Of a stretch of DNA of 64,000 nucleotides, positions 34,940 to 61,060 are shown piece by piece; position 1 is the first letter of the stretch; each line of letters opens with the position of its first letter. The stretch covers positions 124,001 through 188,000 of IMG/VR virus record IMGVR_UViG_3300027573_000779, one strand, 5' to 3'. A program made the translations under genes and the position numbers. The notes beneath the pieces were generated by a model. That model was not told where the DNA came from and did not search any database. It was given only the letters and a program-made list of their open reading frames with translations.

Positions 34940-35451
34940 CTCCCAATAATAAAGAGTTTTTTTATCTTGTCAAGCTTTTCTCAAAATGCCTTTGCAATAA
35001 GCCACAACGTTTTGAATCAAAAAAGACTATTAAAGCTATAAAGCTCTCAATTAGCCATCGGGGATAGCGCAATTTTAGCCAAAGAAATTTCCAAATCGGC
35101 GCTAATAAGCTTTTCTTATTTTTAATATACTTCGTTGCTGCCCAACGATTTAAAACCGCAATAGGCTTGTATCCCATGGGGTAAAGCCAGATAAAACGTA
35201 ATACTTCTGTCATTATTCCCCATTGTATCAGAAATTTTTACGTTGGCAAGAGGGGGGACCTCCCCAATGGGCTAAACGTAGATTGGATATGGATAATTTT
35301 CTTTTTGCTCTTGAGTTAGAAAGATTTGCATCCAAAGACTGCCAGCTTCAGAGACTTTTATATCTTGTGGAAGCTGCCCTTTGCCTAGCGCCACGAAAAA
35401 GTCTTGTCTTCTAATGAGATAAAGCTTCATATGCTCAAGCGCCGCAGGGCT

Positions 35452-35646
35452 TTATGAATTATAATCCCTTTCACAAGACCGACTACAAAACACCTTTTCT
35501 TGCATCTCGTTCTTGTTTTTATCGTCCCTGTTAATACCATACCTGAATTTAGCAGGTTGGCCGCACCACGCGCACTCACCCTCTGCTTTTTGGCGCACAA
35601 CGTTAAAACGTCCAAAAGGGTCTCTTGAGATTGATACTGTATTCAT
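35452..35646 (-). CDS. Small zinc-finger protein (TRASH-like)
   Basis: CAWCG...VFCSRSC. True start MNTVSISR, 7 nt after TTGCAA-16-TATTAT. Confidence 0.65.
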   Translation of the reverse strand: MNTVSISRDPFGRFNVVRQKAEGECAWCGQPAKFRYGINRDDKNKNEMQEKVFCSRSCERDYNS

Positions 35647-37487
35647 GTTCTCAATAATAGAGAGTCTTTTTATGTTTGCAAGACTAAATTTGAGAGTGCC
35701 CACATTTTGGACATTTGAGCACGTCAACCATTGTAACCTTAGAAGGAAGGAAACTAAGCGTATCTCCGTCTCTTGCGGGTTTACCATCAAGGCGACCTGT
35801 ACCATTGACAAGAGCTTTTACCCTTTTTAAGGGGAACTTTACATCGCCAGCAAATTTTTGTGCCTTGTTTGGTCTTCATGCTTTATGTTACTTTCCGTCA
35901 AATTATACAATATTTATGTGTCAACCGCAAATATCTTGTGGTCTATGAGTTACCTGTTCGCCATTTTTCGCCACAAGAACCACTGTTACCTGATATTCTT
36001 TGCGAGCTTTAAGCTGTTGCGCCGCTTTCTTTTGCGCCGAATAGGAGGTTTCAGCTTCGACTTCAATTTCCTTGCCACGATAAAAAGCTTTATATATATT
36101 CATAAAAGAGATTATACATAGTCTTTTTTATGCTACAAGCCAAACTTTATACTGCTAGGGCTGTATTCGTCTCAATAGGTGGCATACACTGATTAATCAC
36201 TTCTAGCAATTCTGACAATTTATTGTCATCTATGCCAAGAAATTCCCCTATAATACTTCTCATATCCTTATCTGTTAAAGCCACTTGTGCAATTTTAAGG
36301 GTTTCGAGTGCCTCTTCTCTTGTAAATTCTTTTGTGTTCATTGATTATAAAAATAGCGTATAAGGAGAAGAGCCGCAAGTAAAATTAATATGCTCATTTA
36401 TTTATTCCTGTTCCTCTTCTGTGTCTTTTTCTTCCAGTTCATCTTCCAGACGTTCAACAACCTCTGCGAGTGTATCACAACTAGACACAACCCACTCTTG
36501 ACTTGTCGAAATTGCTGGTTCGCAATGCCCTAAAGTCCTATACTTGAATTGCTGGTACTCCTGTTGAGACATTGACCGCCGACAAATTTCCTTAAACTCG
36601 TTTAATCCTTCCTCTAGTTCAGTGGCGAGTTCTGCGAGACGTTCCCAATTAGCTTTTGTAATTTTATTCATTGAGTTTCACTGATTTAATTTTAAATTTT
36701 TCGTCTGTTCCCTCGTACTTTTTGACTAGTTCTGCTAGTTTGGTTTGCGCTGGCGCTAGGTCAAGCCATACACCAAACTCCATACAATGGAGCCAGTCAC
36801 CATCGCCCACGTTATCCACGTTATCATTATAACTAGGACACCACTGCACTATGTAATAAACGCTCTTCATGGTTAAAAGATACAATATCTTTTTTAACTG
36901 TCAATAGCGGTTATTGTCAATCTTTCTAATCGCATTAATCGCTGGTATAATACTTTCTGCACCAAGTTCATATGTAATTGATTCTTCAACAACACACAAA
37001 AGAGTCTTGGCTAGTCTAACAGGATGTTCCCCGTTAGAGGAAAACTTTAGTCTTTCGTCATATGTCAACTTTTTATAAAGCTGTAAAGCTCTCTCTTTTA
37101 AAATTTCGCCTGCTTTAACAGACATTTCTTTAATAGCAGATTCAAATTCAGCACTACTACGGGCAACTTCTTTAGTATTCATAAAGTATAAAAGATACAA
37201 TATCTTTTTTAAAAGTCAACACTCAAGCGCCGTTTACAGTTAATCTGCTAATTTGACTTCGCGCCATACCGTCAAGGCATTCAAAAGCTTTTCCTTGTCT
37301 TTCTATTCTAGTTTTTGCGCCATTGATGATATTAGCTACCTTTTGCGCATTTTCGCGCCCGCCGCAATCCTGAATCAGGTTAAAGTTCCCGTTAGAGAAC
37401 ACCCACTTGCGAAAGCTCCGATTGAAGTTAAATAGTGTTTTATTCATATTCTGAGAATATAGAATCTTTTTAAAACGTCAATACCTT

Positions 37488-37781
37488 TTAATTTTTTAGA
37501 GTATAACCCGCACCTTTTAAAGCTGTTTCGTGGTCATAACCTCCCCTATAAGACCCTTCAAGCTCGCTCCAATTCAAAATTTTTCCTTCAGAATCAGCAG
37601 CAAAGATGTAAGTTTCAGGACCAGTAAACATTGCATCAGCCGCAGAAACTACTACATATTCATGCTCTTTAACTTCCATCCCCCCAATGTCTTCAGCATA
37701 ATCTTTTACTTTAATTGGCGGGTCAAGTTTATACAAAACTTTACCCTTAGAGAGAGGTTTAATTAGGGTTGCGTAATTCAT
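37488..37781 (-). CDS. Conserved phage hypothetical protein
   Basis: YVVVSA...GPETYIFAAD...WSELEGS...DHETALKGAGY pattern recalled from other phages. Confidence 0.65.
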   Translation of the reverse strand: MNYATLIKPLSKGKVLYKLDPPIKVKDYAEDIGGMEVKEHEYVVVSAADAMFTGPETYIFAADSEGKILNWSELEGSYRGGYDHETALKGAGYTLKN

Positions 37782-37870
37782 ATGCTCAGTCGCCGCAAGG
37801 GCTTTTTGATTGTTTTTTAAATTGTTTAACTTTTAAGATTATACAATATCTTTTTAAACCTGCAAGACTT

Positions 37871-38188
37871 TTAAGCACCCGCTAAACTAGCTTTTTCCAG
37901 CCAATTAACTTCTGGTTTGTCCTGAAAATGATAGTCCCGTTCTATATAAAGACCAAACTTTAACTTGATAGACTGTAATTCTTTAAGGCTTATAGTGCCG
38001 AATTCGACACAACCCATTCCTAAGTCCGCATAACCCCAAGCAACATCGTCATCAGGTTCTAGGTAACAAATAAGCCAAGTCGCCGCTCCCATTGGGTTAA
38101 AAAACTTAACAATCGGGCGCATATTATCAGGACTAGCTTCCCTAAGTTTTCTGTGAAGTTCTTTAGTTAAGAATTTTTGTCGTGCCAT
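37871..38188 (-). CDS. DUF2958 family protein
   Basis: PIVKFFNPMGAATWLI, GYADLGMGCVEFGTISLKEL and IERDYHF. Confidence 0.85.
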   Translation of the reverse strand: MARQKFLTKELHRKLREASPDNMRPIVKFFNPMGAATWLICYLEPDDDVAWGYADLGMGCVEFGTISLKELQSIKLKFGLYIERDYHFQDKPEVNWLEKASLAGA

Positions 38189-38657
38189 AGTTTAATTATA
38201 CAATATCTTTTTTGCGCTGCAAGTTAAATCTCAGTATAAGCTACTGAAATTGCAGTATTAAGATTTTTGATTGCATCTTCTCTACTAGTGGTGGGATTTA
38301 CCCTCATATAAAACTGAATTCTGTCTTCTGTAGGAGGATATTTCTTTTGTGCTTTCTTTTCCGCCGCGTTATGGCTTCCAGCCTGAATTATGCCTATTTC
38401 TTCTCCCTTACAATAAACAATATAATTTTTCATAGTTAAATTATACGATATCTTTTTTATCTTACAACCGTAAATTCATCCCACCAAAAGAACTTTTTAT
38501 AGGGAAATCCATCAATATCAAAAGTCGCGCCGTTAAAGTGTGGTCCTGATAGTTCAGAAGGAGTATGAACAGTTAGAATTTCTCCCTTTTTAAAGGTTCT
38601 GCCAGTCGCGCAAACATCCTTTAACATCTCGATTTTATAAGTTTTTAAGTTCATCTC

Positions 38658-38826
38658 TCAAGCACCAAGGGGTTGAACTAACTCCTCATCGTCAAAAAAC
38701 CAGCAAACATAAAGAGAATTTCTGGCATTAGTGCAAAAATCGCGCATTTGGACAAACTCAGTTCTTAATAAACTCTGAGTTCTGCCACTGAAACCGCTCG
38801 CCAATTGCTAAATCCTTAAACCTCAT
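38658..38826 (-). pseudogene. Frameshifted small gene
   Basis: MRFKDLAIGERFQWQNSEFIK continues after a +1 shift as TEFVQMRDF...EELVQPLGA*. Total length is 3n+1; its promoter is intact. Confidence 0.55.
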
Positions 38827-38863
38827 AAGAAAGATTATATATAGTCTTTTTAAAAAGACAAAG

Positions 38864-38889
38864 AAAAAAGCCCCCAAAAGGGGGGCTTT
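38864..38889 (-). terminator. Rho-independent terminator
   Basis: AAAGCCCCC/GGGGGCTTT stem with T-tract on the - strand. Confidence 0.85.
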
Positions 38890-38996
38890 AGCCAATTTAT
38901 TTGATAGACCTATATAACCCTTCAAAAGGGCCGGTTGGCGGCACTATCTTTTTAACGACTTTTAGCTACGCCGTATGAATTAGCCAACCCTATCAC
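38864..38996 (-). ncRNA. Candidate structured small RNA with its own promoter and terminator
   Basis: Promoter TTGCTT-16-TAAGCT at 39003-39030; stems UGAUAG/CUAUCA, GGUUGGC/GCCAACC and GGCCCUU/AAGGGUU; terminator at 38864-38889. Confidence 0.55.
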
Positions 38997-39057
38997 TTGA
39001 AAAGCTTAACAGATTTTTTCCAAAAAGCAACAATAAAGCCCTTCGGCGTCTGAGAAT

Positions 39058-39453
39058 TTAAGCTGCAACGGGTTCTGCCACTTCAGTTACAGGAATATTT
39101 TCTGTAACGTGCTCAGTCGCAGGCTGTTCGGGAGCATTGCTCACTCCTGACTTTTCAGCCGCTCGCGCCACCTTTTTGGCCAGTTTTTCAGCCTCTTTAG
39201 CCGCCTCTTCCTTGTGTTTATTTTCCCAATAAGCCTTTTTCGAAGCTGAGATTTTGTCCCTTCCAGCTTGGCTCATCTTACTTCCCTTGGGTCGCCCCTT
39301 TCGAGTTTGAGAAGGAGAAGGAAGAAGGCTAGGAAGAGTTGAGGGAATATTAATTCCACTCATCAACTGATTGTATTCAGACTGCTTTACCGCAATCTCT
39401 TCCAGCAACTTTGCCGCTCGCAAGTGAGTTTCGGGCGTTAACACTATGTTCAT
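39058..39453 (-). CDS. Small basic DNA-binding-like protein (AT-hook plus MSxAGRxKI motif)
   Basis: N-terminal coiled coil, RKGRPKG, KMSQAGRDKISASKKAYW, and a Lys/Ala-rich tail. Confidence 0.6.
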   Translation of the reverse strand: MNIVLTPETHLRAAKLLEEIAVKQSEYNQLMSGINIPSTLPSLLPSPSQTRKGRPKGSKMSQAGRDKISASKKAYWENKHKEEAAKEAEKLAKKVARAAEKSGVSNAPEQPATEHVTENIPVTEVAEPVAA

Positions 39454-39582
39454 TTTGTTCTTTCTTTCTTTTTAATTGTTTTTAAAATTTTGTCTTTAAC
39501 TGACAACACCCATACGTTAACACTACTTTTTAAACGTGCAAGACTATTTTTTTTCAATAATCAGTCTTAAGCTAATAACTAA

Positions 39583-40350
39583 TTAAGCTTCAACTAGTTG
39601 CGCACTAACTTTTTTCTTATCATAGTGGGCGAAATAGTCCGTTTTATACCCGCCTCTTCCCTTCCTTCTAATTAGCTCCCAAGCTTTAGCCGCTTGAGTG
39701 CCAGAGGGTTGCACGCCATGAAGCAAGACTGCATAATTTTTGTTAGCTTTCCGTGCTAGAGAGTCATCATGGTCAATCTTTAGTCCTAAATCTTTTGCCT
39801 CTTTCTCAGAAAAGACAACTTTAACCGATACAAGCCCATGTTTTTCAATGAGATAGTCAAATTTTCCACCCCTTGAAGCAGTAAGCTTTAGATTATGGGG
39901 TATAGACCCTAATCTATTGACCCAAAATGGTAGAGCTTTGGTGTAGGCATAAAACAGCTTATTGGGGTAGCGCCGAACTACTTCCACCCACGCGTCAAAA
40001 TAGTCCTGACTGAAAAAGTCGCCTGAACCATGTATGCGAATTATGGCATATTTCTTAGAAAAACGTGCAATTTCATTGTCAAGCAACGCGACTATTTGGT
40101 TGATTGACTTTCCTTTTACCAAGTCAAAATTGTTCCATCTGCTATCCCTTGTATTCTGAAAAAGGCTTTCGCCTGAAGCCGCATAACACCTAAATTGAGC
40201 GTCGGGTCCTGTTATAATTGGACCGCCAAATCTAGGAACTTTCGCTAGGCAATCCTTTGCAAAGGGGCAGGACCAACCAGCAGGGAGACTGAATATCTTT
40301 GTTTTATCAATCTTGGCGTTACCGTTAGCAAAAAAGAGTCTGTTATTCAT
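39583..40350 (-). CDS. GP88-like protein (radical-SAM-related phage family)
   Basis: FSLPAGWSCPFAKDC...CYA, RIHGSGDFFSQDYFDAW and FYAYTK. Confidence 0.8.
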   Translation of the reverse strand: MNNRLFFANGNAKIDKTKIFSLPAGWSCPFAKDCLAKVPRFGGPIITGPDAQFRCYAASGESLFQNTRDSRWNNFDLVKGKSINQIVALLDNEIARFSKKYAIIRIHGSGDFFSQDYFDAWVEVVRRYPNKLFYAYTKALPFWVNRLGSIPHNLKLTASRGGKFDYLIEKHGLVSVKVVFSEKEAKDLGLKIDHDDSLARKANKNYAVLLHGVQPSGTQAAKAWELIRRKGRGGYKTDYFAHYDKKKVSAQLVEA

Positions 40351-42138
40351 AAATTGGATTATAAATAATCTTTTTAAAAAAGCAAGCCCCCATTTTTTAG
40401 GTGGGGGCCGGGGGGGCAGGGCTACTTATGGGAGAAGTATTTACATACCAACAGGACTATCAACAGGCACACACTCTCCATAATAATTTAAATTGGGCGT
40501 TTGAAACTCAAGGTATCCAACCTTGTAGCGGTAATGTTCTTTAGGCTGTTCAAGAGGAACGAATTCTAGGTAAGTAATTTCCTCATATCGTTTTGAGGCC
40601 AACTCACAAGCTTGGCACATCAAACCATTTTTGCGCCCTTTATATTTCTTTGTATCTTGCTCGGAATTAAGTATTTGGAACAAAGACGAATATATTAAAG
40701 CGTGTTCAAACTTTTCTTGCGTACTCCAAAAGTAAGCAAGTGTAGGAGTCAACCAATGCAATTCGCCATTGGTGCCTTCGTGGTTGTAGAAAGAGAAGTA
40801 TCTTTCTTGAAGTTCGATAGGATTGCTGTCTTCGATTGCTATTGCAACGTGTAAACCAAAGTTTTGACGATACAACTTTTGCATACGCACTCAAGCGCCG
40901 TGGGGCTTATAAAAAAGAAACAGTTTTCCTGAACTGTAAATTTTAAAAACTCTGGTGCTTGATTTATATACTCATACTATCAAGGATTTTTCCTAAGTCA
41001 ACAGGAATAATGGGGGAACAACCTTATTTTTTTGGACTTTTTTAAGATTTTTTGCTCAATTTTGAGACATTTTAGGGTTTTTTCCTACTCTCAAGCGTCG
41101 ATGAGCTATTTTATAATTTCAGCTAGAGGCCAAGTGGTTTCGTCCATTTCATAATTTTTATCTCCTTTTGAGAACCAGAATGTCCCTACTGAGCTACTGC
41201 AATTAGTAAAGCCGTGTGCGCGACAAGCATCAAAGACCGCCTGAACATCCTTGTCTTTATCCCATTTAAGTTCTGTACGTATTGCTGTGTATATTAATTC
41301 CCATTCTCCAGCACAAGCAACGACTTTAGAATCAATTCGAAACTGATTCATTTTGTGGATTTGATAGGCCGCGACTGCAATAACAATACTATCGGGCATT
41401 TCAACTAGTTCCATAAAGAAAGTTTACAATCTGAGGGGCTTTTAGTTTGATAGAATGATTACTTTTGTGTACCTATCTTTGCACAAGTCATTCGCTTCTT
41501 CACTTGTAAGACTTTCATCAATCTCTTTTCCTTTTACACTGACTGCATTGACAAGTTGAACTATCCTATAACGCTTATCCAACAAGTTTTTTTGCAGCGT
41601 AACAGTGGTTTGTTTGTTATTCATAAACACAAGAATACAATATCTTTTTTAACTCTCAAGAACTTTTTGCGCCGCCTCAGAGCATTATTTTAGCTTTTTC
41701 TTCCATAGTTAAAACCGCCGCGTGAATACTTTTAATGTCTTCAAAGTCAAGGAACACATCTGTTTGATTACCTATAATTGTTACTCTATCTGGCCGCACT
41801 ACAGCAATATTTCCAACATTAATAGGTTCAAAAATAGTATTATCCGCCTCTATCAGTTCATCAAGGGTGACGCTTTGAACTACTTGGCCACAAGAGCACA
41901 GTTCTACAACTTTTGTTTTTCGTCTAACTAGAATAAATTTTGAGGTTCCCACATCTCCTAATACGCGATTGTAACCTATTGAGGACAAACAATTTAGGAG
42001 CGCCGTTAAATGTGATTTACTTTTAATTGTAAGTTGGACCGCATCGTTCATATAGGAGGATTATACAACATCTTTCTATTAAATCAAGGTTTTATGGAGA
42101 AATGTTTCGAACTACTATGCATTGCCAAGTAGCATGTA

Positions 42139-42171
42139 TGTATTTACATTGTATTTACTTTGTATTTACAT
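42139..42171. repeat. Three tandem 11-bp near-palindromic boxes TGTATTTACWT
   Basis: 42139-42149, 42150-42160 and 42161-42171. Confidence 0.85.
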
Positions 42172-42857
42172 CCTTTAACTCTATATTATATTATACCATT
42201 GTCAGTTAACGCCTCAATATACGCCTTGGCATACACTCTATGCCTTAACCTCAACTCTTTAGTGTCTTCATTGGCAAGCTTTATCCTCAGAGAATTAAGC
42301 TTCTGCAAAGAACTTCTAACGCTATCGGTGATAGTAGAATCGTCAATATCGGGCATGACCTTGTGAGAGTGCTGGCTTAAGCTGTCAATAACTTCAGTCA
42401 GCGCCGCAATTATCTCTAAGTTGCTCATAATCAAAGTCTTATCCTTGGAACAGTCCGTCACTATAAGGTTGATAATCCTTTTTGGCCATTATCTCCTTAA
42501 CCCTTTCCTCTGTCACTTCGCGCCAACCAACGGGCAAACATTGATACCATTGACCTTTGAACTTCACAAAGTCGCCAGACGACATAGAACGGACATGTAA
42601 TTTGCAGAAAAGTGTTGATTCACAACCACTTCCAGCGTTGAAAGCCGCAAAAATGTCCTCTAAGCCCAAATTGTCATCCCACACACTGGAAAACTCTACA
42701 GTTTGCGCCGCACCAAAGGAACGGGGATATTTAATTTCAATCATGCACCCATTCTAGCAAGACTTTTTAAAGTTGCAACCCTAAAAGTTTGCCTAAAATG
42801 TAGACACCCAAGAAAAAGAATCAATTAAAGTCAATAAGAACAGCAATTAAGAGCCAC

Positions 42858-43064: not shown

Positions 43065-43069
43065 TCCCT

Positions 43070-47855: not shown

Positions 47856-47856
47856 A

Positions 47857-48752: not shown

Positions 48753-48803
48753 TTAAAAAAATTTAATATTCCGAACTTGGTCCCCAACTTGACCTTCGTT
48801 CAT
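48753..48803 (-). pseudogene. 16-codon remnant of a DQVW-type gene
   Basis: MNEGQVGDQVRNIKFF*, followed directly by a junction element. Confidence 0.5.
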
Positions 48804-53435: not shown

Positions 53436-53684
53436 TCAAAATGAGTTTTTGGTAGTTACAAAAACTTGTTCCATAATTTGGAGTCGAACCTGTTCTTGGG
53501 TTTGTTCCCAACCTCTTTCTAATTGGTCCCAAACTTGGTTTCCAACTTGGTTTCCAATTTGATTGCTAAAGTGATACCTAATTTGATTTAGAATTGTTAA
53601 ATATTTTTTATCCATTTCACAAACAGGTCTAAGACAAAAACCATACCGAATGCTAAAACTAATATTAATATAATGTACATTCAT
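53436..53684 (-). CDS. DQVW-type tetrapeptide-repeat mini-protein
   Basis: NQIGNQVGNQVWDQL...EQVRLQI. Confidence 0.6.
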   Translation of the reverse strand: MNVHYINISFSIRYGFCLRPVCEMDKKYLTILNQIRYHFSNQIGNQVGNQVWDQLERGWEQTQEQVRLQIMEQVFVTTKNSF

Positions 53685-53896
53685 TCAACTAAACTGTTGA
53701 TTTGGTGCTCAATTTGGTAGCCAATTTCTGCCCACATTTGGTTTTGAGTTTGGTCCCAAACTTTGTTTTCTATGGTTTGATGCCCAATTTGCTTAGAAAT
53801 TTGAAGTCTTATTAAGTCCAAAGTATCTGTTAAGACTTGGCACTGAAACCGGTACTGGTCCCTAATTTGGTCTTTTGTTTTAAATCTCTTCAACAC
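53681..53896 (-). CDS. DQVW-type tetrapeptide-repeat mini-protein
   Basis: DQIRDQ...KVWDQTQNQMW. Confidence 0.65.
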   Translation of the reverse strand: MLKRFKTKDQIRDQYRFQCQVLTDTLDLIRLQISKQIGHQTIENKVWDQTQNQMWAEIGYQIEHQINSLVE

Positions 53897-54766
53897 TTAG
53901 ATTGGTTCTTTGATAAGTTTCGTATACATCAATAGGGTCGCTGGCTGTCCAAGGCATTAAAATAAAATTAATTCCAAATGGGTGATACATTTCCATTTTT
54001 TCTTTGTCTGTTGCCTCGTCTAAATAGCCAGCCACATACCAATCCAGCCCTTCAAATGGGTAGGCCCAGTTTTTTCCTTTCTTATCCGGCCTGTGTCCTA
54101 CGACATAAATTCTATCTCTGTCGTTTCGTTTATAACGCGCCCCTTCCCATTGGTCCGAACCAATCTTTACTTTAACTGGTTGCACGTCAAAACACCCACA
54201 TTGTTCTAACCATTCTTTTAAAGTCATATGCTCAAGCGCCGCAGGGCTTAGTTTATTCTAATTCCCACCATTCGGGGTCCACTTCTGCCAAAGCTTTACC
54301 TAAGTCACTAGGAAAAACAACGGCAATATCATAAACGGGATTTTCTTTACCTTCACTATCTGATTCTGTCAAACTCAAACCCCTATGATTCAGAGTTAGG
54401 TTAGAGACTTTCTTAAAAAATGTTTCTAATTTGGCTTTATCGTGTTCTTTCATATGCTCAAGCGCCGCAGGGCTTAGTTTTATTTATAATAAGTCTGAAT
54501 ATAGGCATCTGCCACCTGTTTGAAATAGCTAAAAATTCGCTCTTTTGTTTGTTCTGTTCCGTCGCCGCTCATATTAACAGTTACGCCTCCAATCTTGAGA
54601 GGCTTTACTTTACCATCCCTAAAAAGCCTCAAAAAACGCGAAACTGTCATCAGTTCAACCCACCTACGTTCAGGGGTCTTGATTTCGACCTTGAACTTCT
54701 TCACCTTTGGAAGGAAGTTGGCTACCAACGTAATTGATATCATGAAACGATGATAGCGGGTCTTTT

Positions 54767-54961
54767 TTAAAAATCAAGTCGATTGCTCAAGCCGCTCCTA
54801 AAAATTTCACTTACAATTTGGTCCCAAATTTGCCCCTTAACTTGGTTCCAAGTTTGTCCTCCAATTTGGCTCCCAACTTGTTTCCAAACTTGCTCCCAGA
54901 CTTGGTCCCCAACTTGGCTCCAAACTTGGTCTATAATCCTTTCTTTAATTATTTGGGTCAT
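54767..54961 (-). CDS. DQVW-type tetrapeptide-repeat mini-protein
   Basis: DQVWSQVGDQVWEQVWKQVGSQIGGQTWNQVKGQIWDQI. Confidence 0.75.
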   Translation of the reverse strand: MTQIIKERIIDQVWSQVGDQVWEQVWKQVGSQIGGQTWNQVKGQIWDQIVSEIFRSGLSNRLDF

Positions 54962-54967
54962 AAAGGC

Positions 54968-55192
54968 TTAAATTTGGTCCCAAATTGCGTCCTCAAGTTG
55001 TTTCCGAAGGTTGTCCCAAAGTTGTTCCCTAAGTGGATTCCAAACTTGTATAACCTGCATCCAAATTGGGTCCCAAACCTGTTCATCAAGCTGACTTTTA
55101 ACTTGGTCCCCAACTTGGTCCCAAATAATCTTACGAATCTCAATATCGGTTTGGTACCAATCCTCCGATAATTTGTCTAGCATCATTTTCAT
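54968..55192 (-). CDS. DQVW-type tetrapeptide-repeat mini-protein
   Basis: IWDQVGDQVKSQLDEQVWDPIW. Confidence 0.7.
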   Translation of the reverse strand: MKMMLDKLSEDWYQTDIEIRKIIWDQVGDQVKSQLDEQVWDPIWMQVIQVWNPLREQLWDNLRKQLEDAIWDQI

Positions 55193-55514
55193 TTATTAAA
55201 ACTTTTTTAAAAATCAATCACAAAAAGAAACTAAGGAATTCTTGGTGGCAGTGGTAAAACAATTCCTAATTTAGTAAGGGCTTGTTCATCTGTATTGTTC
55301 AACCCGTTATAAATCACTTTTGTAGCTATATAAAGACACTCGGCTTGTGTCCAATCTGGAAACCTTTTCTCTAAAGAATCACAAAATCTATCCCTTAATT
55401 CTTCAACAGGTATGGGATTAGATTTAGAAACAAATGTAAAAGCAATTTTGAAAACCACGTCTGCTAAAATTTCAGAATTATCACTTAAATCTTTTAAAAT
55501 TTTTGGTGAAATTT

Positions 55515-55730
55515 TCATAACCATATTTGCTCAAGAACTTGGTTCCGAACTTCCATGAAAACGTCATTCCTTATTTGTTCCCTAGATGGGTTTCCAACAT
55601 GCTTCATAACTTGGCTCCCAATCTCAGTTCGGTCCCCAACTTGGTCCATAACGTGGTCCCAAACTTGGTCCATAACGCGGTCCCAAACTTGGTCCACAAC
55701 TTGATACTGAATTTTGGTGACTAAGCTCAA
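55515..55730 (-). CDS. DQVW-type tetrapeptide-repeat mini-protein
   Basis: DQVWDRVMDQVWDHVMDQVGD. Confidence 0.75.
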   Translation of the reverse strand: MSLVTKIQYQVVDQVWDRVMDQVWDHVMDQVGDRTEIGSQVMKHVGNPSREQIRNDVFMEVRNQVLEQIWL

Positions 55731-56027
55731 TCAATCCGCTTTTGTTTCAACTTCTTCAATAGAATATTCAGGTAAAGCTTTATTAATCCGCAGTTTAACG
55801 CGCTCTATAATTGGTTTTACCACATCGGGCGCTCTGGCTACGGTTTTGAGTTTATTAGCTCTACCTATAGCTACCCGTAAACCAAAGTCTCTGTTAAACG
55901 AGTCTCCAGCATCAATATTGGTATAGCTCCAGCCAATATGAACCGTTTTGCGGTCATGGTCTTCTACTCCCGCCACAATGCCGCGCCTTTGATTTGTTTT
56001 GGGGTCTCTGACAAATTGAATAAACAT
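55731..56027 (-). CDS. Conserved phage hypothetical protein
   Basis: HIGWSYTNIDAGDSFNRDFGLRVAIGRA pattern; own promoter. Confidence 0.65.
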   Translation of the reverse strand: MFIQFVRDPKTNQRRGIVAGVEDHDRKTVHIGWSYTNIDAGDSFNRDFGLRVAIGRANKLKTVARAPDVVKPIIERVKLRINKALPEYSIEEVETKAD

Positions 56028-56065
56028 ATCTGTATTTTAAATATTTTTTTTAAAAAAGCAAGCAA

Positions 56066-57061
56066 TTAATAGTCCTGATTTAAAATCTTGACCGACAGTG
56101 ATTTACCAAGAATTGGGGAATATTTGGGCGTTATTGGTCGCAAAACAATCCCCTCTGCCTTGCGCTCTTGTCCTGTAGATGTGAGATAAATAGCCTTGTT
56201 AGCTTCTTCCTGAAGCCGCGCCATGGTCCAAGTATCATCAAATGTAAAAGGTTCACTAACAGGAATAACCACAGGAATTTGCAATTGGTTGCATAACTCA
56301 TTTATTTCCTGCCAGTTATACCATTTGCCAGTATCAAATTCTTTAACATTAAAGACAAACATCTGAAAACTGTTCAGGCCCAATGGGTTACCTTGAATTT
56401 TGCCCCCGCAAGCCTCTGCTTGAATAGCAATGTTTTTACCCAACTCTTTAAGCTTAGAAGTTAGATTATATTGGTCTGCAATCTTCCAAAAGCCGGTCCC
56501 TTCTTTTTGCTCCAGCCGCCGACTGCAAACGCGAACTTCACCGTTTTCATAAATCACAGTCATTGAAGAACCGTCAGCTTTGATAGTTAAATAACAAAGT
56601 TCATTCCTAAACTCTTCTAAAATCTCTGGATAGTTTTGAATGTTTTCTTCGTCTGTAATTGAGATTAAATGAGTAGGAAAAGAACCCTTGGCGTCTCCAT
56701 TAACAGAAGAATCAATAGGTTTGTCGTATTTTAAAATACCTAAAGCTTCCGAAACGTCCGAACCTTCTTCAACCTGATAGTTATAGCTTGGAATGATAGT
56801 TAAAGGGCAAACTAAACCCTGAGAAGGAGAGCCGCGAAACTTGGCGTTCCAGACACGATATTTTTGCCTTTCTAAAAAACTAAAATAAGAATTCGCGCTA
56901 GGAACAATAGAGTCAATACGAATAAACACCACTAAATCGCCGTTTTTATATTCTCCCTTCTTAACCACAACAGGCCATTCTTTAATTTTGGCGACTTCAA
57001 GAGAGTCGGCGTTGAAATGTGGTTGGACGCTATGAATTCGTTCAATTGTGGCTAATTTCAT
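56066..57061 (-). CDS. RNA ligase, DRB0094/Rnl5-like family
   Basis: KLATIERI...GDLVVFIRIDS N-terminal OB-like domain; motifs TIKADGSS, IQAEACG, FVFNV, EGIVLR and SVKILN. Confidence 0.9.
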   Translation of the reverse strand: MKLATIERIHSVQPHFNADSLEVAKIKEWPVVVKKGEYKNGDLVVFIRIDSIVPSANSYFSFLERQKYRVWNAKFRGSPSQGLVCPLTIIPSYNYQVEEGSDVSEALGILKYDKPIDSSVNGDAKGSFPTHLISITDEENIQNYPEILEEFRNELCYLTIKADGSSMTVIYENGEVRVCSRRLEQKEGTGFWKIADQYNLTSKLKELGKNIAIQAEACGGKIQGNPLGLNSFQMFVFNVKEFDTGKWYNWQEINELCNQLQIPVVIPVSEPFTFDDTWTMARLQEEANKAIYLTSTGQERKAEGIVLRPITPKYSPILGKSLSVKILNQDY

Positions 57062-57071
57062 TTTAAAAGGT

Positions 57072-57097
57072 ACCCACTAGCGAACTGGCTAGTGGGT
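57072..57097. terminator. 10-bp hairpin in the RNA ligase leader (terminator-like)
   Basis: ACCCACTAGC/GCTAGTGGGT; long T-run on the + side and a weak one on the - side. Confidence 0.55.
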
Positions 57098-57251
57098 GGT
57101 TTTTTTTACCTTTACTTAACAAGCCTGCAAACCAACAAACAGGTTAATTTGCAGCGTCTTCCCCGAAGACATTTTAATGATATCAAGCCTTTCTAAAAAG
57201 TCAATCTCTCAAGTGCCGAGGGGCTAAGTTTTCGCTAAGTGCGCCGCAAGG

Positions 57252-57503
57252 CTAATCTTTTTGGTGAACTTTAAATGCTAGTATCTTAGTGGGGTTTGGA
57301 CAACGCCAACCGTCAGTAATACACTCATATCCAAGAGTCCTCAGAACTGTTCTAAAAGTATTTGTTTCACTTAATGATAGTTCTACCGCATCGCCCACAT
57401 TCATTGTGTTCGCTAAAGTAATGAGATTCTTTAAGGTTTGTTCTCTTGAACCCCTTCCTTTAGGAATGGGTAAATTTTTATGTATCGTAAAACTTTTAAC
57501 CAT
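57252..57503 (-). CDS. Small putative DNA-binding protein
   Basis: IHKNLPIPKGRG...MNVGDAV pattern common in small phage proteins. Confidence 0.5.
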   Translation of the reverse strand: MVKSFTIHKNLPIPKGRGSREQTLKNLITLANTMNVGDAVELSLSETNTFRTVLRTLGYECITDGWRCPNPTKILAFKVHQKD

Positions 57504-57951
57504 TCGTTTTATGGTAAAGGTAACATTTTACTTGGGATTAGCCTAAATCTATCTTTTTTGTTTTTGCTTTGAATATATCTTTTAATATCATCGTGTCTTC
57601 CATAAATACCCCTTTCAGAGTATTGATAAGGCTCCCATGCACCGTATCCATCCCAATCGGTACAAAACTCAATTACTATCTGAAAAACGGGCGCTTTTAA
57701 GTGAACCCATTTTCCTAGCTTAGAATCATAAACATGTACTCCAGCATTATCATAATATTTTTTGCGCTCTATTTCTTTATAGGTTGTGCCGCCTTTATTG
57801 CCACATTTCGGACAATATTCCCAAGGGTCTTCAATATTTAAAGTAAACTGTTTATGGCAGCTTAAGCATTTAAAACGAGCATAATGGCCATCTCCATGGT
57901 CTTCTTGCCATTTGGGACTAATTTGTAATAAAGTTCTCATACAGGGCTATT

Positions 57952-58176
57952 TTATTTTTGGTCCCAAACTTGGTCCTCAACTTGGTCCCAAACTTGGCCC
58001 TGAACTTGGTCCCAAACTTGGTCCCGAACTTGGTCCCGAACTTGGTCCCGAACTTGGTCCCGAACTTGGTCCCGAACTTGGTCCCAAACTTGGTCCCAAA
58101 CTTGGTCCCAAACTTGGTCCCGAACTTGGTCCCGAACTTGGTCCCAAACTTGGTCCTCAACTTGACCCTCAATCAT
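57952..58176 (-). CDS. DQVW/DQVR protein encoded by a near-perfect 12-bp tandem array
   Basis: About 17 units of GACCAAGTT(T/C)GG; ATG at 58176. Confidence 0.7.
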
Positions 58177-58189
58177 AAAGATTTAGTTT

Positions 58190-58315
58190 TTAATTCCTCA
58201 ACTTGCCAATAAACTTGGTCTTTAATTTGTTACCATTAACTTGGTTCCAAACTTGGTCCCCAACTTGGTTCCGAACTTGGCCCCAAACTTGGCCCCAAAC
58301 TTGGTCCGCGTTCAT
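58190..58315 (-). pseudogene. DQVW-type gene with a frameshifted 3' part
   Basis: MNADQVWGQVWGQVRNQVGDQVWNQVNG, after which the repeat continues in another frame (QIKDQVYWQVEE). Confidence 0.55.
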
Positions 58316-58344
58316 AAAAGAAGGGTAGCCCCGCAAGGCTACCC
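58316..58344 (-). terminator. Rho-independent terminator after the DUF932 gene
   Basis: GGGTAGCC/GGCTACCC stem followed by TTCTTTT on the - strand. Confidence 0.85.
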
Positions 58345-58353
58345 CAAATTAAC

Positions 58354-59358
58354 CTAATTTTTTGGCAAGGTTAAGTCCTGTAGGAGTAAATCAGTAGCCC
58401 TCTGTTTGAGATTAGCTCCAGTACCAAGTAGCGCCGATTCAAACTTTGCTTCCTGTCTATTAGCTCCTTCTTCTGCTCTGGTGCTTCTTTTTTGGTCAAC
58501 AAATTCAGTTATACTGTTTAGGTAATCATACCTTGTCTCGCCTACATTCCCTGTGCCACGCTGAAAAAGTTCTGTTACCTGCTCTCGAATATTCTCAGTT
58601 CTTGAGCTACATTCATAAAGTCCAGTTTCCTTATTCAATTTCCCCGGAAACAAGGTTTCATTGTACCTAACTACCTCTTCTTCATTGCATTTCTGGTCTT
58701 TGAGCATTTTCAAGACTAGCTCCAGCCGCCCAAAATAACCATAAGCAATTCCGAGCGCCCTTTGAACTTCCTCTTTGTGACTCTTAAAACTTTTGGTATG
58801 GCGCATCTTAACCTGATTCTTTGCGCCTTTTAGGGCTGCATTAAGGGTGTTTTGACAGACTACCCGCACCGCTACATTCTGCATCCATACTGAGTGCGTA
58901 CCATCGTGGCTTGAAATCATCAAAATCCACTTGTCCATCTTATCGCTAGGGTCAATATACATGGTTTCTGGCAGCTTGGCCATAATCCAGATTTTGCGCC
59001 CCTCTCTTAAAGACCCCGCAGTCTCATAAACTGCCTGACCTTCAGAAATAACCGAATCAAAAAATTCAAAAGCTTCCTCGTTTTGGACTGGCGTATATCG
59101 ATTACCTACCACTCCCAGTTTAACCCCATTGTCCTCCCTTACAACAGCTTTATAATCTTCAAATTCAGAAAGACCACTCTCTGTCTGAATAAAAATTGGC
59201 TCTTTGCGAACCCTCCAATCCAAATGCGCCAATTGGATTGCTTCTTTGGCTGTAACTGTTCCTTTGACAACGCTTCCCAATGAATGCCAAGGAACTATAT
59301 TATTACCGCTAAAAGTTTCCGCAGTGCCGTCTTCTCTAATTGTTATTTCGTGTGACAT
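58354..59358 (-). CDS. DUF932 (TIGR03299-like) phage/plasmid protein
   Basis: PWHSLG, YTPVQNEEAFEFFD, YETAGSLREGRKIW, SSHDGT, VRVVCQNTL and RHTKS. Confidence 0.92.
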   Translation of the reverse strand: MSHEITIREDGTAETFSGNNIVPWHSLGSVVKGTVTAKEAIQLAHLDWRVRKEPIFIQTESGLSEFEDYKAVVREDNGVKLGVVGNRYTPVQNEEAFEFFDSVISEGQAVYETAGSLREGRKIWIMAKLPETMYIDPSDKMDKWILMISSHDGTHSVWMQNVAVRVVCQNTLNAALKGAKNQVKMRHTKSFKSHKEEVQRALGIAYGYFGRLELVLKMLKDQKCNEEEVVRYNETLFPGKLNKETGLYECSSRTENIREQVTELFQRGTGNVGETRYDYLNSITEFVDQKRSTRAEEGANRQEAKFESALLGTGANLKQRATDLLLQDLTLPKN

Positions 59359-59846
59359 ATTGTTTTACAAGTTTGTTTATCTGTCTACAGCATAACAAAT
59401 CTTTTTAAACCGTCAACAGGTTTCTTTTGAAAGTCTCCCCACTGCTTTTTCAAGTGCAACCATCTTAACCTCAAGTGGTTGCCCAGTCAAAAAAGCAACC
59501 AAAAGAGATTGAGACAAATCTTCTATTATCACATCAGCCTCTTTTGGAGGAGTAGTACGAGTTTGTGTCCTAATTTTAGACAGGCAGTTCTTCATTGTTT
59601 CTTTATAAAAATTACGCTCTCTTCAAGCCCGAAAGCCCAAAGAAAATTATTCCAACCTCTGTGTCCTAGTCCGCGCATTTTCCAGACTATTCTTTTAGTA
59701 TCATGAGCATTTTTGATTAACCAGTCTTGTTTTTGTTCTCTAGACCAGTTAACGTTGTATATTTCATCCACAGGAAAGAATCTTGTGTTGTCAGCTAAAA
59801 AATCTTCAATTTCTGGTAAATTTGGCATTGCTCAAGCGCCGCAAGG

Positions 59847-60035
59847 CTAGTTTATTTTTAGGTCTCTAACTTGGTCCCAAATTTGTCCCACAACTTGGCT
59901 TCTAAATTGGTCCTGTATTTGGCTTTGGCCCCAAATTTGTTTCTTGGTTTCATGCCCAACTTGGTCCCAAATTTCGCTCCAAATTTGGTCCCAAACTTGG
60001 TCCCGAACTTGTCTTTTTATTAAATTACTATTCAT
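59847..60035 (-). CDS. DQVW-type tetrapeptide-repeat mini-protein
   Basis: [20 protein letters not shown]; ends KIN*. Confidence 0.75.
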   Translation of the reverse strand: MNSNLIKRQVRDQVWDQIWSEIWDQVGHETKKQIWGQSQIQDQFRSQVVGQIWDQVRDLKIN

Positions 60036-60328
60036 TCAAATAATCATCGGGATTAACTTCTTCGCCAACATCGTCTTCTTCAGTTAAAGGAGAACCACAA
60101 ATAGCACAAATTTCTTCTAAAAGCGAATAGCTGCTATGCGCTCCGCCATCTCCCTCTTGAACCAATACTTCAACCAGTTTATAGACGCGCCAATTGACTA
60201 ACTCTGCTAATACTGGCAAGTCTTCCTTGGTAGGAGGCCAACAAGAGGCGCAAAGGTCTAAATGTTGGTCGTTAAGTCTTATTCTAGGCATCTCTCAAGC
60301 GCCGAGGGGCTAAGTTTTCGCCGCAGGG

Positions 60329-60535
60329 CTAGTTTATTTTTATGTTCCAAATGTGTTCCACAACTTGGCCTTCTACTTCTTCCCCAACTTCTTCCCAAAC
60401 TTGGCCCCAAACTTGTTCAAAAACCTGTTCCCAAACTTGACCTTCTACTTGGTCCCAAATTTGTTCCCCAATATGGTTATGAACTTGGCTCCTAATTTGG
60501 TCATCAATTTGCTTCCTAATGTTATCTTTCGTCAT
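60329..60535 (-). CDS. DQVW-type tetrapeptide-repeat mini-protein (MTxDxI subfamily)
   Basis: MTKDNI...EQIWDQVEGQVWEQVFEQVWGQVWEEV; ends KIN*. Confidence 0.75.
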   Translation of the reverse strand: MTKDNIRKQIDDQIRSQVHNHIGEQIWDQVEGQVWEQVFEQVWGQVWEEVGEEVEGQVVEHIWNIKIN

Positions 60536-60826
60536 TAACGCGCCGATTTAAATTCTGGTATTTCCATCCAATGCGCCCGAACTGAAGGTAAAGCTATTGT
60601 ACTCGTATAAGTTAAATCATTGTCCGTCATAACAATAATTTTTGTGCCTTGCTGCTCCCATCTTCCAGTAATTTGCTGCCATCCCTCTTTCCGTTTAAGA
60701 GACCAAAGAACGGTGGTTTTTTGTGGAGGTTTCTCTTTCTCGAAATTCTTCCAAATCATAAAAACGATGATAATAAAAGTTTTTAAAATGTCAATGCTCA
60801 AGCGCCGCAGGGCTTAAGCCCTTTTT

Positions 60827-61060
60827 TTAAAACGCCGAGGGGCTAAGCGCCATAGGGGGTTCTGTGTTCCAAGCTTGGTGCCAAATTTGGTTTTCTACTT
60901 GGCTCCCAATCTGTTCCCAAACTTGGTCCCAAATCTGTTCCCAAACTTGGCCCCAAACTTGGCCTTCTATTTGGTTCCAAATTTGGTCCCCAATATGGTG
61001 GTCCCCAATATGGTCCCTAACTTGGTCCATAACTTGGTTCTGAATGTTGTCTCTTGTCAT
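60827..61060 (-). CDS. DQVW-type tetrapeptide-repeat mini-protein (MTxDxI subfamily)
   Basis: MTRDNIQNQVMDQVRD...GQVWEQIWDQVWEQI. Confidence 0.75.
   Translation of the reverse strand: MTRDNIQNQVMDQVRDHIGDHHIGDQIWNQIEGQVWGQVWEQIWDQVWEQIGSQVENQIWHQAWNTEPPMALSPSAF

What the first reader, a model, noticed from the sequence alone, without database searches (positions are those of the whole stretch)
35426..60846. Cassette-like gene array punctuated by an unrecognised junction hairpin element (top candidate system)
Seen: at least 22 copies of (AATAAAC)TARGCCCTGCGGCGCTTGAG(CAT/AG), all but one in the coding orientation, confined to the small-gene array and always at gene boundaries. On the 5' side it overlaps or follows a stop. 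On the 3' side it runs straight into ATG (35430, 37781, 38654, 43673, 43934, 45998, 48733, 54227, 54453, 59828, 60291) or straight into a -35 box (GAGCA-TTGACA at 46531, 52696, 60794; GAGAGA-TTGACT at 57205). Upstream genes read through it in different frames (KPCGA*, KPCGV*, QPLGA*, LSPSAF*, KIN*), so it is not a protein motif. It folds as AAGC(G)CC-GCA-GGGCTT on the template strand (6 bp, one bulged G, GNA/GNRR loop), and the variants at 46002 and 46532 keep a perfect stem. There is no U-tract, so it is not a terminator. Hypotheses: (a) a short ssDNA recombination site, attC-like in logic but not in sequence, driving gene capture, loss and shuffling; (b) an RNA processing or initiation signal that makes internal cistrons near-leaderless; (c) a template-strand hairpin promoter like that of N4 virion RNA polymerase, where a -11 loop centre would put +1 at the G of GCAUAUG. 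No integrase or vRNAP is visible in this window.
Basis: partly seen in the sequence, partly recalled or inferred. Interest (0 to 1): 0.9.

Follow-up and report, generated by a model that had tools for sequence, protein, structure and literature searches.

The report
Small RNA knot punctuating phage genes
A 20-base GC-rich element, repeated 22 times at gene borders of an uncultured 209-kb phage, shows paired base changes that fit a tiny RNA pseudoknot; it most likely marks where early messages are cut or controlled in a phage that uses no ribosome-binding sites.

Summary
The repeat is real. The window holds 18 full copies on the coding (minus) strand, one inverted copy and four half copies, against about 0.1 expected by chance. 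Three more copies lie outside the window. All sit at gene borders.

- About 38 near-identical sigma-70-type promoters put their -10 box 6-9 nt before the ATG. Most genes are therefore leaderless, and there is no Shine-Dalgarno signal anywhere.
The three loop bases pair instead with the last three bases of the element, in seven compensated versions: UGC/GCA, CUC/GAG, CAC/GUG, CGC/GCG, UAC/GUA, UUC/GAA and CUU/GAG. With the GCC/GGC stem this makes a minimal H-type pseudoknot.

The element ends 0-3 nt before an ATG in 12 copies and directly at a -35 box in 7.

I read it as an RNA junction signal. Most likely it is a cleavage or recognition site that leaves the next cistron nearly leaderless. A translational operator and an attenuator remain open.

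In the 92% of the genome scanned I found no integrase, HUH nuclease or phage RNA polymerase. No relative carries the element, so gene-order tests were impossible. The mechanism is unproven.

The parts
60795..60813 (-). Full junction element (type UGC/GCA), directly followed by -35 TTGACA at 60794
60833..60843 (-). Half element (S1 hairpin GCCCCUCGGCG) followed by U4A7, upstream of the full copy
60292..60310 (-). Full element (CUC/GAG), 0 nt before ATG 60291
60319..60329 (-). Half element upstream of the 60310 copy
59829..59847 (-). Full element (UGC/GCA), 0 nt before ATG 59828
57206..57224 (-). Full element (CUC/GAG), 1 nt before -35 TTGACT at 57204
57242..57252 (-). Half element upstream of the 57224 copy
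54455..54473 (-). Full element (UGC/GCA), 1 nt before ATG 54453
54229..54247 (-). Full element (UGC/GCA), 1 nt before ATG 54227
52697..52715 (-). Full element (UGC/GCA), directly followed by -35 TTGACA at 52696; upstream ORF ends at the UGA inside it
48735..48753 (-). Full element (CUC/GAG), 1 nt before ATG 48733
46718..46736 (-). Full element (UGC/GCA), followed by neither ATG nor promoter
46532..46550 (-). Full element (UGC/GCA, L3 variant UUUGGA), directly followed by -35 TTGACA at 46531
46002..46020 (-). Full element (CGC/GCG), 3 nt before ATG 45998; lies in the leader of promoter 46102-46075
46040..46050 (-). Half element in the same leader
43936..43954 (-). Degenerate element (UGC/GAG, S1 and S2 partly broken), 1 nt before ATG 43934
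43675..43693 (-). Full element (UGC/GCA), 1 nt before ATG 43673
41088..41106 (-). Degenerate element (AUC/GAG), no ATG or promoter after it
40888..40906 (-). Full element (CAC/GUG), 3 nt before ATG 40884
39038..39056 (+). The one inverted copy (UUC/GAA), in the gap after the gene ending at 39058
38655..38673 (-). Full element (CUU/GAG, with G.U; A14-U23 compensated in S1), 0 nt before ATG 38654
37783..37802 (-). Full element with one extra loop base (UGC/GCA), 1 nt before ATG 37781; lies in the leader of the strongest promoter (-10 ends at 37838)
35432..35450 (-). Full element (UGC/GCA), 1 nt before ATG 35430
33183..60802 (-). Span holding about 38 near-identical sigma-70-type promoters (aAAaGgcTTGAcatTTtAAAAAGATaTTGTATaAT), with -10 placed 6-9 nt before the ATG; this is the other junction module of the array

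Best explanation
The repeat is a cis-acting element of about 20 nt, read as RNA within the early polycistronic transcripts. Its form is GCC-C-NNC-GGC-(G/U)(C/U)UUGA-GN'N'.

It folds as a minimal H-type pseudoknot:
- stem 1 is GCC/GGC;
- stem 2 joins the three loop bases NNC to the last three bases GN'N';
- loop 1 is 1 nt;
- loop 3 is the conserved GCUUGA.

It marks borders between expression units in a phage that uses no Shine-Dalgarno sequences and expresses most early genes as leaderless mRNAs.

Inferred, not shown: a trans-acting factor, most likely an endoribonuclease of phage or host, recognises the knot and cuts at its 3' edge. The next AUG then lies 0-3 nt from a new 5' end, like the promoter-made leaderless mRNAs. 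Where a promoter follows instead, the cut simply releases the upstream message.
For: Shown:
- The copy number is far above chance.
- 21 of the 22 full copies lie on the transcribed strand of one leftward gene block, which runs from about 121 kb down to about 30 kb.
- Copies sit at gene borders (P about 1e-11).
- Stem 2 is 97% paired over 22 copies with 16 double-change cells; 0 of 500 shuffles reach this, and slid controls collapse.
- There are seven compensated haplotypes. The two copies that break stem 2 also have a damaged stem 1.
- Stem 2 is kept in promoter-adjacent copies as well, for example UAC/GUA at 108.85 kb. The element is therefore an autonomous unit.
- It ends 0, 0, 0, 0, 1, 1, 1, 1, 1, 1, 3 and 3 nt before the ATG in 12 copies.
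- Promoter-driven genes in the same array have -10 to ATG distances of 6-9 nt, so they are leaderless (the pattern is described for Deinococcus-Thermus in PMC12340547).
- There is no SD enrichment: GGAG occurs in 3 of 103 upstream regions against 4.6 in random windows.
- Two strong promoters (-10 ends at 37838 and 46075) have no ATG after them. They feed a 40-70 nt leader that ends in the element and then the ATG. So the element acts in primary transcripts without an upstream ORF.
- Canonical U-tract terminators exist on the same strand at 58345-58322, 38889-38867 and 34161-34131. The U-less element is therefore not how this phage terminates transcription.
Against: - No RNA data exist, so cleavage is pure inference.
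- The fold is thermodynamically marginal: hairpin MFE is -5.3 kcal/mol with z about 0. Stem 1 has only 3 bp, and A14 is uncompensated in 3 copies.
- G.U against A.C counts (4 against 3) do not decide between RNA and single-stranded DNA of the other strand for the pseudoknot model.
- Seven copies abut a promoter rather than an ATG, where making a leaderless mRNA cannot be the purpose.
- No candidate nuclease or RNA-binding protein was identified. Pfam and PHROGs are silent on the small proteins.
- All copies come from one genome, so they are paralogues, not independent lineages.
Confidence: 0.4

Rival explanations
1. Translational operator. The pseudoknot sequesters the bases just 5' of the AUG. 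A phage or host RNA-binding protein stabilises it to switch off, or time, a subset of early cistrons. This resembles S15 on the rpsO pseudoknot, or T4 RegA acting on many early messages.
For: The 3' strand of stem 2 ends 0-3 nt before the AUG in 12 copies. A folded knot that close to the start codon should block start-codon placement (established knowledge of the 30S mRNA channel). The weak intrinsic stability suits a protein-stabilised switch. The conserved single-stranded GCUUGA looks like a protein contact.
Against: Seven well-conserved copies that keep stem 2 have no adjacent AUG; they abut a -35 box 35-45 nt before the next start. No repressor candidate was found.
Confidence: 0.2
2. Conditional transcription attenuator or insulator, the stem-loop half of a PeSL-like terminator/promoter cassette. 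It damps read-through from the many upstream promoters and may need a phage antiterminator to be passed.
For: Seven copies sit exactly where PeSL stem-loops sit, just before an early promoter. Three of these are composites of half element, U4A7, full element and promoter. Two copies lie between a promoter and its gene, like an attenuator. PeSL precedent: PMC2839356 and PMC4122927.
Against: There is no U-tract. The stem has only 3 bp, or 6 bp with a bulge. The phage has ordinary strong terminators where it needs them. Twelve genes with no promoter of their own lie directly behind the element and would be silenced by efficient termination. Loop-to-flank covariation is not a feature of terminators.
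Confidence: 0.12
3. DNA-level recombination module. The repeats, together with the 36-bp promoters, serve as patches of homology, or as a folded single-stranded site, through which gene cassettes are gained, lost and shuffled. This would be PeSL-like, or attC-like if a dedicated enzyme exists.
For: Identity between copies stops sharply at the edges of the element while the flanks are unrelated. The 32-nt composite at 60290-60321 recurs at 57.2 kb with an ATG after one and a promoter after the other. Half elements, and 5' halves fused to an ATG at 57940 and 50316, look like recombination scars. The chimeric haplotype UGC/GAG at 43954 looks like a crossover between two types.
Against: No tyrosine or serine recombinase, HUH or transposase domain appears in the Pfam hits on record or in my scans of about 92% of the genome. 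Five assemblies of the phage are 99.9-100% identical, so no polymorphism can be seen. Maintained stem-2 complementarity needs selection on a fold, which homology-driven exchange alone does not give.
Confidence: 0.1
4. Promoter for a phage-encoded RNA polymerase (N4-type hairpin promoter, or a T7-type promoter ending just before +1), giving near-leaderless middle transcripts.
For: A conserved block of about 30 nt ends 0-3 nt before the ATG, as a phage promoter would.
Against: No RNA polymerase or sigma gene was found in 92% of the genome. The giant ORF is a tape measure protein with a PhageMin_Tail domain and has no PDB relative. The template-strand hairpin has no covariation and would carry A.C mismatches. 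Seven copies are fused to a sigma-70 promoter, which would give long leaders. Double-stranded promoters do not covary.
Confidence: 0.04
5. CRISPR-repeat mimic (RNA anti-CRISPR, solitary repeat units) that soaks up host Cas proteins.
For: The layout of A-rich 5' part, GC hairpin and an 8-nt tail containing UUGA recalls CRISPR repeats. The array region holds anti-defence genes (ArdC-like, AcrVA2-like, DUF932). Racr precedent: PMC10651486.
Against: A scan of 185,579 species genomes for two such units 40-70 nt apart found no CRISPR array. It found only GC-rich tandem or coding repeats and REP-like intergenic units. Loop-to-tail covariation is not a CRISPR repeat feature. The strict placement at cistron borders is not explained.
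Confidence: 0.03

Closest known systems
PeSLs (promoter-early stem-loops) of T4-type phages (Arbiol et al. 2010, PMC2839356; Comeau et al. 2014, PMC4122927)
   Same: Short conserved regulatory modules repeated between small orphan early genes. Near-consensus sigma-70 promoters combine with a GC stem-loop. Seven copies here are stem-loop plus promoter composites. Repeats of this kind can drive cassette shuffling by recombination.
   Different: PeSL stem-loops are effective terminators, and PeSLs end in a Shine-Dalgarno sequence. Here there is no U-tract and no SD. Twelve copies have no promoter at all and run into the ATG. The element has loop-to-flank covariation (a pseudoknot). Shuffling could not be tested.
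Intercistronic RNase III processing sites of T7 early mRNA, and tRNA punctuation of mitochondrial transcripts (from established knowledge)
   Same: Structured RNA placed between cistrons of a polycistronic transcript and cut to release individual messages. In mitochondria the products are leaderless mRNAs, as proposed here.
   Different: Those signals are long double-stranded hairpins or whole tRNAs cut by known enzymes. This one is a 20-nt pseudoknot with no known enzyme, and cleavage has not been shown.
Pseudoknot translational operators (E. coli rpsO/S15; T4 gene 32; from established knowledge)
   Same: A hairpin loop pairs with bases just upstream of the start codon, forming an H-type pseudoknot next to the AUG.
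   Different: Those are single autoregulatory sites that include an SD. Here there are 22 copies on unrelated genes and no SD, and a third of them are not next to an AUG.
Integron attC sites
   Same: An imperfect palindrome directly after the stop of one cassette and just before the next ORF, in one orientation, forming an array of small promoterless genes.
   Different: attC sites are 57-141 bp with R''/L''/L'/R' boxes and extrahelical bases, and are recombined by IntI. No integrase is present, and most genes here have their own promoter.
N4 virion RNA polymerase hairpin promoters
   Same: A short GC hairpin with a 3-nt loop upstream of early genes.
   Different: N4 promoters need a template-strand hairpin and a virion RNA polymerase. 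Neither is supported here.

Membership tests
PeSL-type terminator/promoter cassette | Sigma-70-like early promoter within the repeated module | tested here: inconclusive
   7 of 21 coding-strand copies abut a consensus promoter. 12 have no promoter and run into an ATG.
PeSL-type terminator/promoter cassette | Stem-loop that works as a transcription terminator | tested here: not met
   There is no U-tract. Stem 1 has 3 bp, hairpin MFE is -5.3 kcal/mol and z is about 0. Real U-tract terminators lie elsewhere on the strand. Function itself was not assayed.
PeSL-type terminator/promoter cassette | Indel or replacement breakpoints between close relatives fall in the modules | not testable with these tools
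   No relative carries the array. The other assemblies are 99.9-100% identical.
Integron attC recombination site | Integron integrase (tyrosine recombinase) in the element or genome | tested here: not met
   No integrase or recombinase Pfam hit in about 192 of 209 kb. 16 kb was not seen.
Integron attC recombination site | Long imperfect palindrome with R''-L''/L'-R' boxes and a GTTRRRY core | tested here: not met
   The unit is 19-20 nt with consensus GCCCUGCGGCGCUUGAGCA and no GTTRRRY.
N4-type hairpin promoter | Hairpin on the template strand supported by its stem | tested here: not met
   The bulged stem is 84% paired against 83% in shuffles. It has 9 G.U cells on the coding strand, which are A.C on the template strand.
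N4-type hairpin promoter | Virion or phage-encoded single-subunit RNA polymerase | tested here: not met
   The 5468-aa ORF is a tape measure protein with no PDB relative. No RNA polymerase Pfam hit appears in the scanned 92%.
H-type RNA pseudoknot cis-regulator | Two stems in which loop bases of stem 1 pair with bases 3' of it, supported by compensatory changes | tested here: met
   Stem 2 (columns 18-20 with 30-32) is 97% paired, has 16 double changes and 7 compensated haplotypes, and no shuffle out of 500 reaches this. Stem 1 is 91% paired with one compensated A-U.
H-type RNA pseudoknot cis-regulator | Loop lengths sterically compatible with coaxial stems | tested here: met
   L1 is 1 nt across a 3-bp stem 2, L2 is 0 nt, and L3 is 6 nt across a 3-bp stem 1 (alignment A2). 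Compatibility is judged from established pseudoknot geometry, not modelled.
H-type RNA pseudoknot cis-regulator | The fold forms in RNA and affects expression | not testable with these tools
   This needs probing, 5'-end mapping or reporters.
CRISPR repeat mimic (Racr) | A cognate CRISPR array with the same repeat in a host genome | tested here: not met
   A two-unit pattern scan of genome contigs gave no CRISPR array. The scan needed close sequence matches.
Any Rfam family | Match at the gathering score | tested here: not met
   No match in the window.

The most novel reading that the evidence does not exclude
A bacterial virus carries its own RNA punctuation system. A 20-nt pseudoknot placed between cistrons is cut by a dedicated, still unidentified nuclease. 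Internal genes of polycistronic early transcripts are thereby converted into leaderless mRNAs. This would be a bacterial-virus counterpart of mitochondrial tRNA punctuation, and a way to express operons with no ribosome-binding sites at all.
Probability: 0.25. Interest if true: 0.85.

Novelty: new variant of a known kind. Interest (0 to 1): 0.62.

Why it matters
If the reading is right, this phage shows how a large genome can run about 90 kb of same-strand genes with no Shine-Dalgarno signal. It would use two junction modules: a promoter that starts transcription at the ATG, and a tiny pseudoknot for genes that lack such a promoter.

That would give a concrete, testable case for how internal cistrons are expressed in SD-less, leaderless systems, which is an open question for several bacterial phyla and their phages. 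It would also add a very small, covariation-supported RNA motif that is in no RNA family library.

Even if the function proves to be repression or attenuation, the element is a compact regulatory part of possible use in synthetic operons.

The repeated modules may also explain how orphan early genes are shuffled in huge phages.

Tried and rejected
Looking for relatives:
- Megablast of 12 kb of the array against 50,697 phage records gave nothing.
- The terminase is only about 24% identical to Bacillus phage terminases.
- Searching IMG/VR for the motif 17-mer gave only the source contig plus single chance hits.
The covariance model found no multi-copy locus among the low-GC hits.
- Homologues of array proteins (DUF932, DUF6927, a 396-aa protein, rIIB-like) are either distant or only the phage itself.
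- Other assemblies of the phage from four samples are 99.9-100% identical. Apparent gene differences were differences between gene callers.
- DnaQ-like relatives at 50-58% identity exist in IMG/VR but have 26-31% GC. They show no model hits near their replication genes and no shared promoter type.

RNA family and structure checks:
- Rfam found nothing in the window, nor at similar motifs elsewhere.
- Minimum-free-energy folding gives no signal.

Ideas considered and dropped:
- GAG as a Shine-Dalgarno core. The spacing is 2-5 nt, there is no SD use in the genome, and GAG is kept in copies with no AUG.
- A MotA-box or -35-like reading of CTTGAG. No -10 box follows in the coding sequence.
- Stop-codon readthrough or frameshift stimulation. 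The frames do not fit.
- Resemblance of CCUGCGG...UUGGA to the 3' end of 16S rRNA. This is from memory, is absent in the CUC/CAC variants, and is treated as coincidence.
- A 3.8-kb 'ORF-poor' stretch. It was an artefact of a gene running off a locus.
- AGTGTAAT as a late promoter. It has 3 hits against 2.55 expected, so it is not enriched.

Full report
**What the window is**

The window is positions 124,001-188,000 of IMG/VR contig IMGVR_UViG_3300027573_000779, which is 208,933 bp long. The same genome was assembled at 99.9-100% identity from at least four samples, once as a circular permutation of 208,883 bp.

It is an orphan phage.
- No phage record matches its DNA.
- Its terminase is about 24% identical to Bacillus phage terminases.
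- No array protein has a close relative among 5.8 billion proteins.

Window 1-30 kb holds structural genes. The ORF at 54-7649 is the C-terminal half of a 5,468-aa ORF with an N-terminal PhageMin_Tail domain, so it is a giant tape measure protein and not a virion RNA polymerase. From about 30 kb in the window to about 121 kb in window-equivalent coordinates, nearly all genes lie on the minus strand.

The motif lies on the minus strand, which is the coding strand.
- The 14-mer with up to 2 mismatches gives 10 hits against 0.10 expected.
- The hairpin core GCCNNNCGGYG gives 15 hits against 0.69 expected.
- A covariance model built from 19 copies finds 18 full minus-strand copies and one plus-strand copy in the window, and nothing in window 1-35 kb.
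- Four further half copies carry the hairpin only.

Fifteen of 18 copy centres are intergenic, where 12.2% of the array is intergenic (P about 1e-11). The other three are overlapped only by the tail of an upstream ORF that stops at the UGA inside the element.

Twelve copies end 0-3 nt before an ATG and four end at a -35 box.

Aligning upstream regions shows about 38 near-identical promoters on the minus strand between 33 and 61 kb. The consensus is aAAaGgcTTGAcatTTtAAAAAGATaTTGTATaAT, and the ATG follows 6-9 nt after the -10 box. A start site about 7 nt after the -10 box falls on or next to the A of the ATG, so these genes are leaderless. The same layout is documented for Deinococcus-Thermus (PMC12340547).

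Shine-Dalgarno motifs are not enriched upstream of 103 genes. GGAG occurs 3 times against 4.6 in random windows. Late genes lack them too.

Junctions in the array fall into three kinds:
- overlapping or nearly touching stop and start codons;
- a promoter;
- the element, alone or fused to a promoter.

**The structure**

Nine of its cells are G.U on the coding strand, which would be A.C on the template strand. RNAalifold keeps only GCC/GGC.

The informative signal lies elsewhere. The three loop bases (alignment columns 18-20) are complementary to the three bases that end the element (columns 30-32). Over 22 copies this stem is 97% paired with 16 double-change cells. No shuffle out of 500 reaches the observed covariation, and sliding the partner by one to three columns destroys it.

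The haplotypes are UGC/GCA (11 copies), CUC/GAG (4), and one each of CGC/GCG, CAC/GUG, UAC/GUA, UUC/GAA and CUU/GAG. The only two copies that break the stem, 43954 and 41106, also have a damaged first stem and look degenerate.

With GCC/GGC as stem 1, this is the topology of an H-type pseudoknot. Loop 1 is 1 nt, there is no spacer between the stems, and loop 3 is the 6-nt conserved GCUUGA. G28 and A29 are invariant. These loop lengths are compatible with known pseudoknot geometry, which is established knowledge and was not modelled here.

Three caveats apply.
- The nested hairpin alone is weak: -5.3 kcal/mol with z about 0.
- All copies are paralogues of one genome.
- G.U against A.C counts (4 against 3) do not by themselves tell RNA from single-stranded DNA.

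**Distribution over the genome**

I fetched overlapping pieces of the same genome and scanned each with the model. Window-equivalent 1-182.7 kb and 198.9-208.9 kb were covered, about 92% of the genome.

Three more copies appeared, all on the same transcribed strand and all fused to a promoter:
- at about 65.06 kb, upstream of an rIIB-like gene;
- at about 81.2 kb, of type CUC/GAG;
- at about 108.85 kb, of type UAC/GUA.

None lies in the rightward replication and sugar-modification genes or in the structural genes.

Three sites share one composite layout: half element, U4A7, full element, then promoter (60.8, 65.06 and 108.85 kb).

**What the junction types say**

- Stem 2 is maintained in the seven promoter-adjacent copies, so the element is an autonomous unit and not merely a way to mask an AUG.
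- Two strong promoters (-10 ends at 37838, the best-scoring of all, and at 46075) have no ATG at leaderless distance. They transcribe a 40-70 nt leader without an upstream ORF that ends in the element, followed by the ATG. The element therefore works in primary transcripts and does not depend on a terminating ribosome. The distance from the upstream stop also varies, from -23 to +70 nt.
- Ordinary strong U-tract terminators occur on the same strand (58345-58322, 38889-38867, 34161-34131), whereas the element has none. Twelve promoterless genes sit right behind it, so it cannot be an efficient terminator.
- The next functional signal, ATG or -35 box, always starts 0-3 nt after the last paired base. 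Promoter-made messages start 0-2 nt before their ATG. A cut at the 3' edge of the knot would give the downstream cistron the same kind of 5' end.

**Best explanation and rivals**

I therefore favour an RNA junction signal recognised by a trans-acting factor, most likely an endoribonuclease, that punctuates the early transcripts (confidence 0.4). The fold and the placement are shown. Cleavage and the factor are inferred.

- A translational operator (0.2) fits the AUG-adjacent copies and the weak fold, but not the seven promoter-adjacent ones.
- A conditional attenuator of the PeSL kind (0.12) fits the promoter-adjacent copies, but not the lack of a U-tract or the 12 dependent genes.
- A DNA recombination module (0.1 as primary role) has hints in its favour: sharp homology edges, half elements, 5' halves fused to an ATG at 57940 and 50316, and one chimeric haplotype. 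Against it, no recombinase, HUH or transposase domain appears in any Pfam record or scan.
- An N4-type promoter (0.04) fails its defining tests.
- A CRISPR-repeat mimic (0.03) also fails its defining tests.

**Comparison with known systems**

The nearest described thing is the PeSL of T4-type phages: conserved promoter plus stem-loop cassettes between orphan early genes that also mediate shuffling (PMC2839356, PMC4122927). This array shares the repeated consensus promoters and the idea of junction modules. It differs in four ways: there is no SD, the promoters are leaderless, the element is U-less and supported as a pseudoknot, and it often occurs without any promoter.

In function the proposal resembles T7 RNase III sites and mitochondrial tRNA punctuation. 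In shape it resembles pseudoknot operators such as rpsO. It is in no Rfam family.

I rate it a new variant of a known kind, namely a structured intercistronic regulatory RNA.

**Limits**

- The host is unknown.
- 16 kb of the genome was not read.
- The small array proteins are orphans.

Noticed in passing
window 33183-60802, minus strand: About 38 near-identical sigma-70-type promoters with a conserved spacer (TTtAAAAAGAT). The -10 box lies 6-9 nt before the ATG, so the mRNAs are leaderless. There is no Shine-Dalgarno enrichment anywhere in the window.
   Followed up: yes
window 53500-61330 (for example 57958-58164, 54818-54931, 60897-61038): At least a dozen small genes carry tandem repeats with a 12-nt (4-amino-acid) period from one family (unit TTGGTCCCAAAC on the plus strand). 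The longest array has 17 copies. Several frames are open, so the true reading frame is unclear. These genes often precede the element.
   Followed up: partly
window 54-7649 and L360:1190-17596: The large ORF at the start of the window is the C-terminal half of a 5,468-aa ORF with an N-terminal minor-tail (tape measure) domain and zinc-peptidase-like motifs. Lambda-like tail L, K, I and J genes lie upstream. This implies an unusually long tail.
   Followed up: partly
window 57940 and 50316, minus strand: The 5' half of the element is fused directly to an ATG (AAUAAAAUAGCCCUGU-AUG and AAUAAAAUAAGCCCC-AUG), as if the 3' half had been deleted.
   Followed up: no
window 60795-60843; L016:4262-4317; L224:8212-8267: The same composite occurs three times: hairpin-only half element, U4 and A7-8, full element, then a consensus promoter. 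These may mark major boundaries between transcription units.
   Followed up: partly
L220-L226 (window-equivalent 64-121 kb): The leftward block also encodes two RNA ligases, an RlaP nucleotidyltransferase, a Thg1-like enzyme, an ArfB-like RF-1 domain protein (134 aa), an AcrVA2-like protein, an rIIB-like protein and six tRNAs. This amounts to a heavy investment in RNA repair and anti-defence.
   Followed up: no
L226-L230 (window-equivalent about 125-162 kb): A large cluster of glycosyltransferases, epimerases, methyltransferases and an aminotransferase lies next to a bacterial-type replisome (Pol III alpha, DnaB, DnaG-like, RecA) and a class II ribonucleotide reductase with an intein.
   Followed up: no
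L313:2440-2570 (Chitinophaga MAG); L338:6322-6497; L342:4899-5092; L329:5835-6050; L322:4722-4824: Bacterial genomes hold intergenic tandem units with a similar core (AGCCC-NN-CGGC-NN-UKGAG-NN). In L313 each unit is followed 7 nt later by an AUG and keeps loop-to-tail complementarity. The others look REP-like, and their loop-to-tail pairing is inconsistent. Any relation to the phage element is unknown.
   Followed up: partly
window 11289-11296, 14558-14565 (minus strand); 25679-25686 (plus strand): AGTGTAAT lies 8-15 nt before three late-gene ATGs, and GTGTAAT precedes two more. It is not enriched overall (3 hits against 2.55 expected), so a late-promoter role is only a guess.
   Followed up: partly
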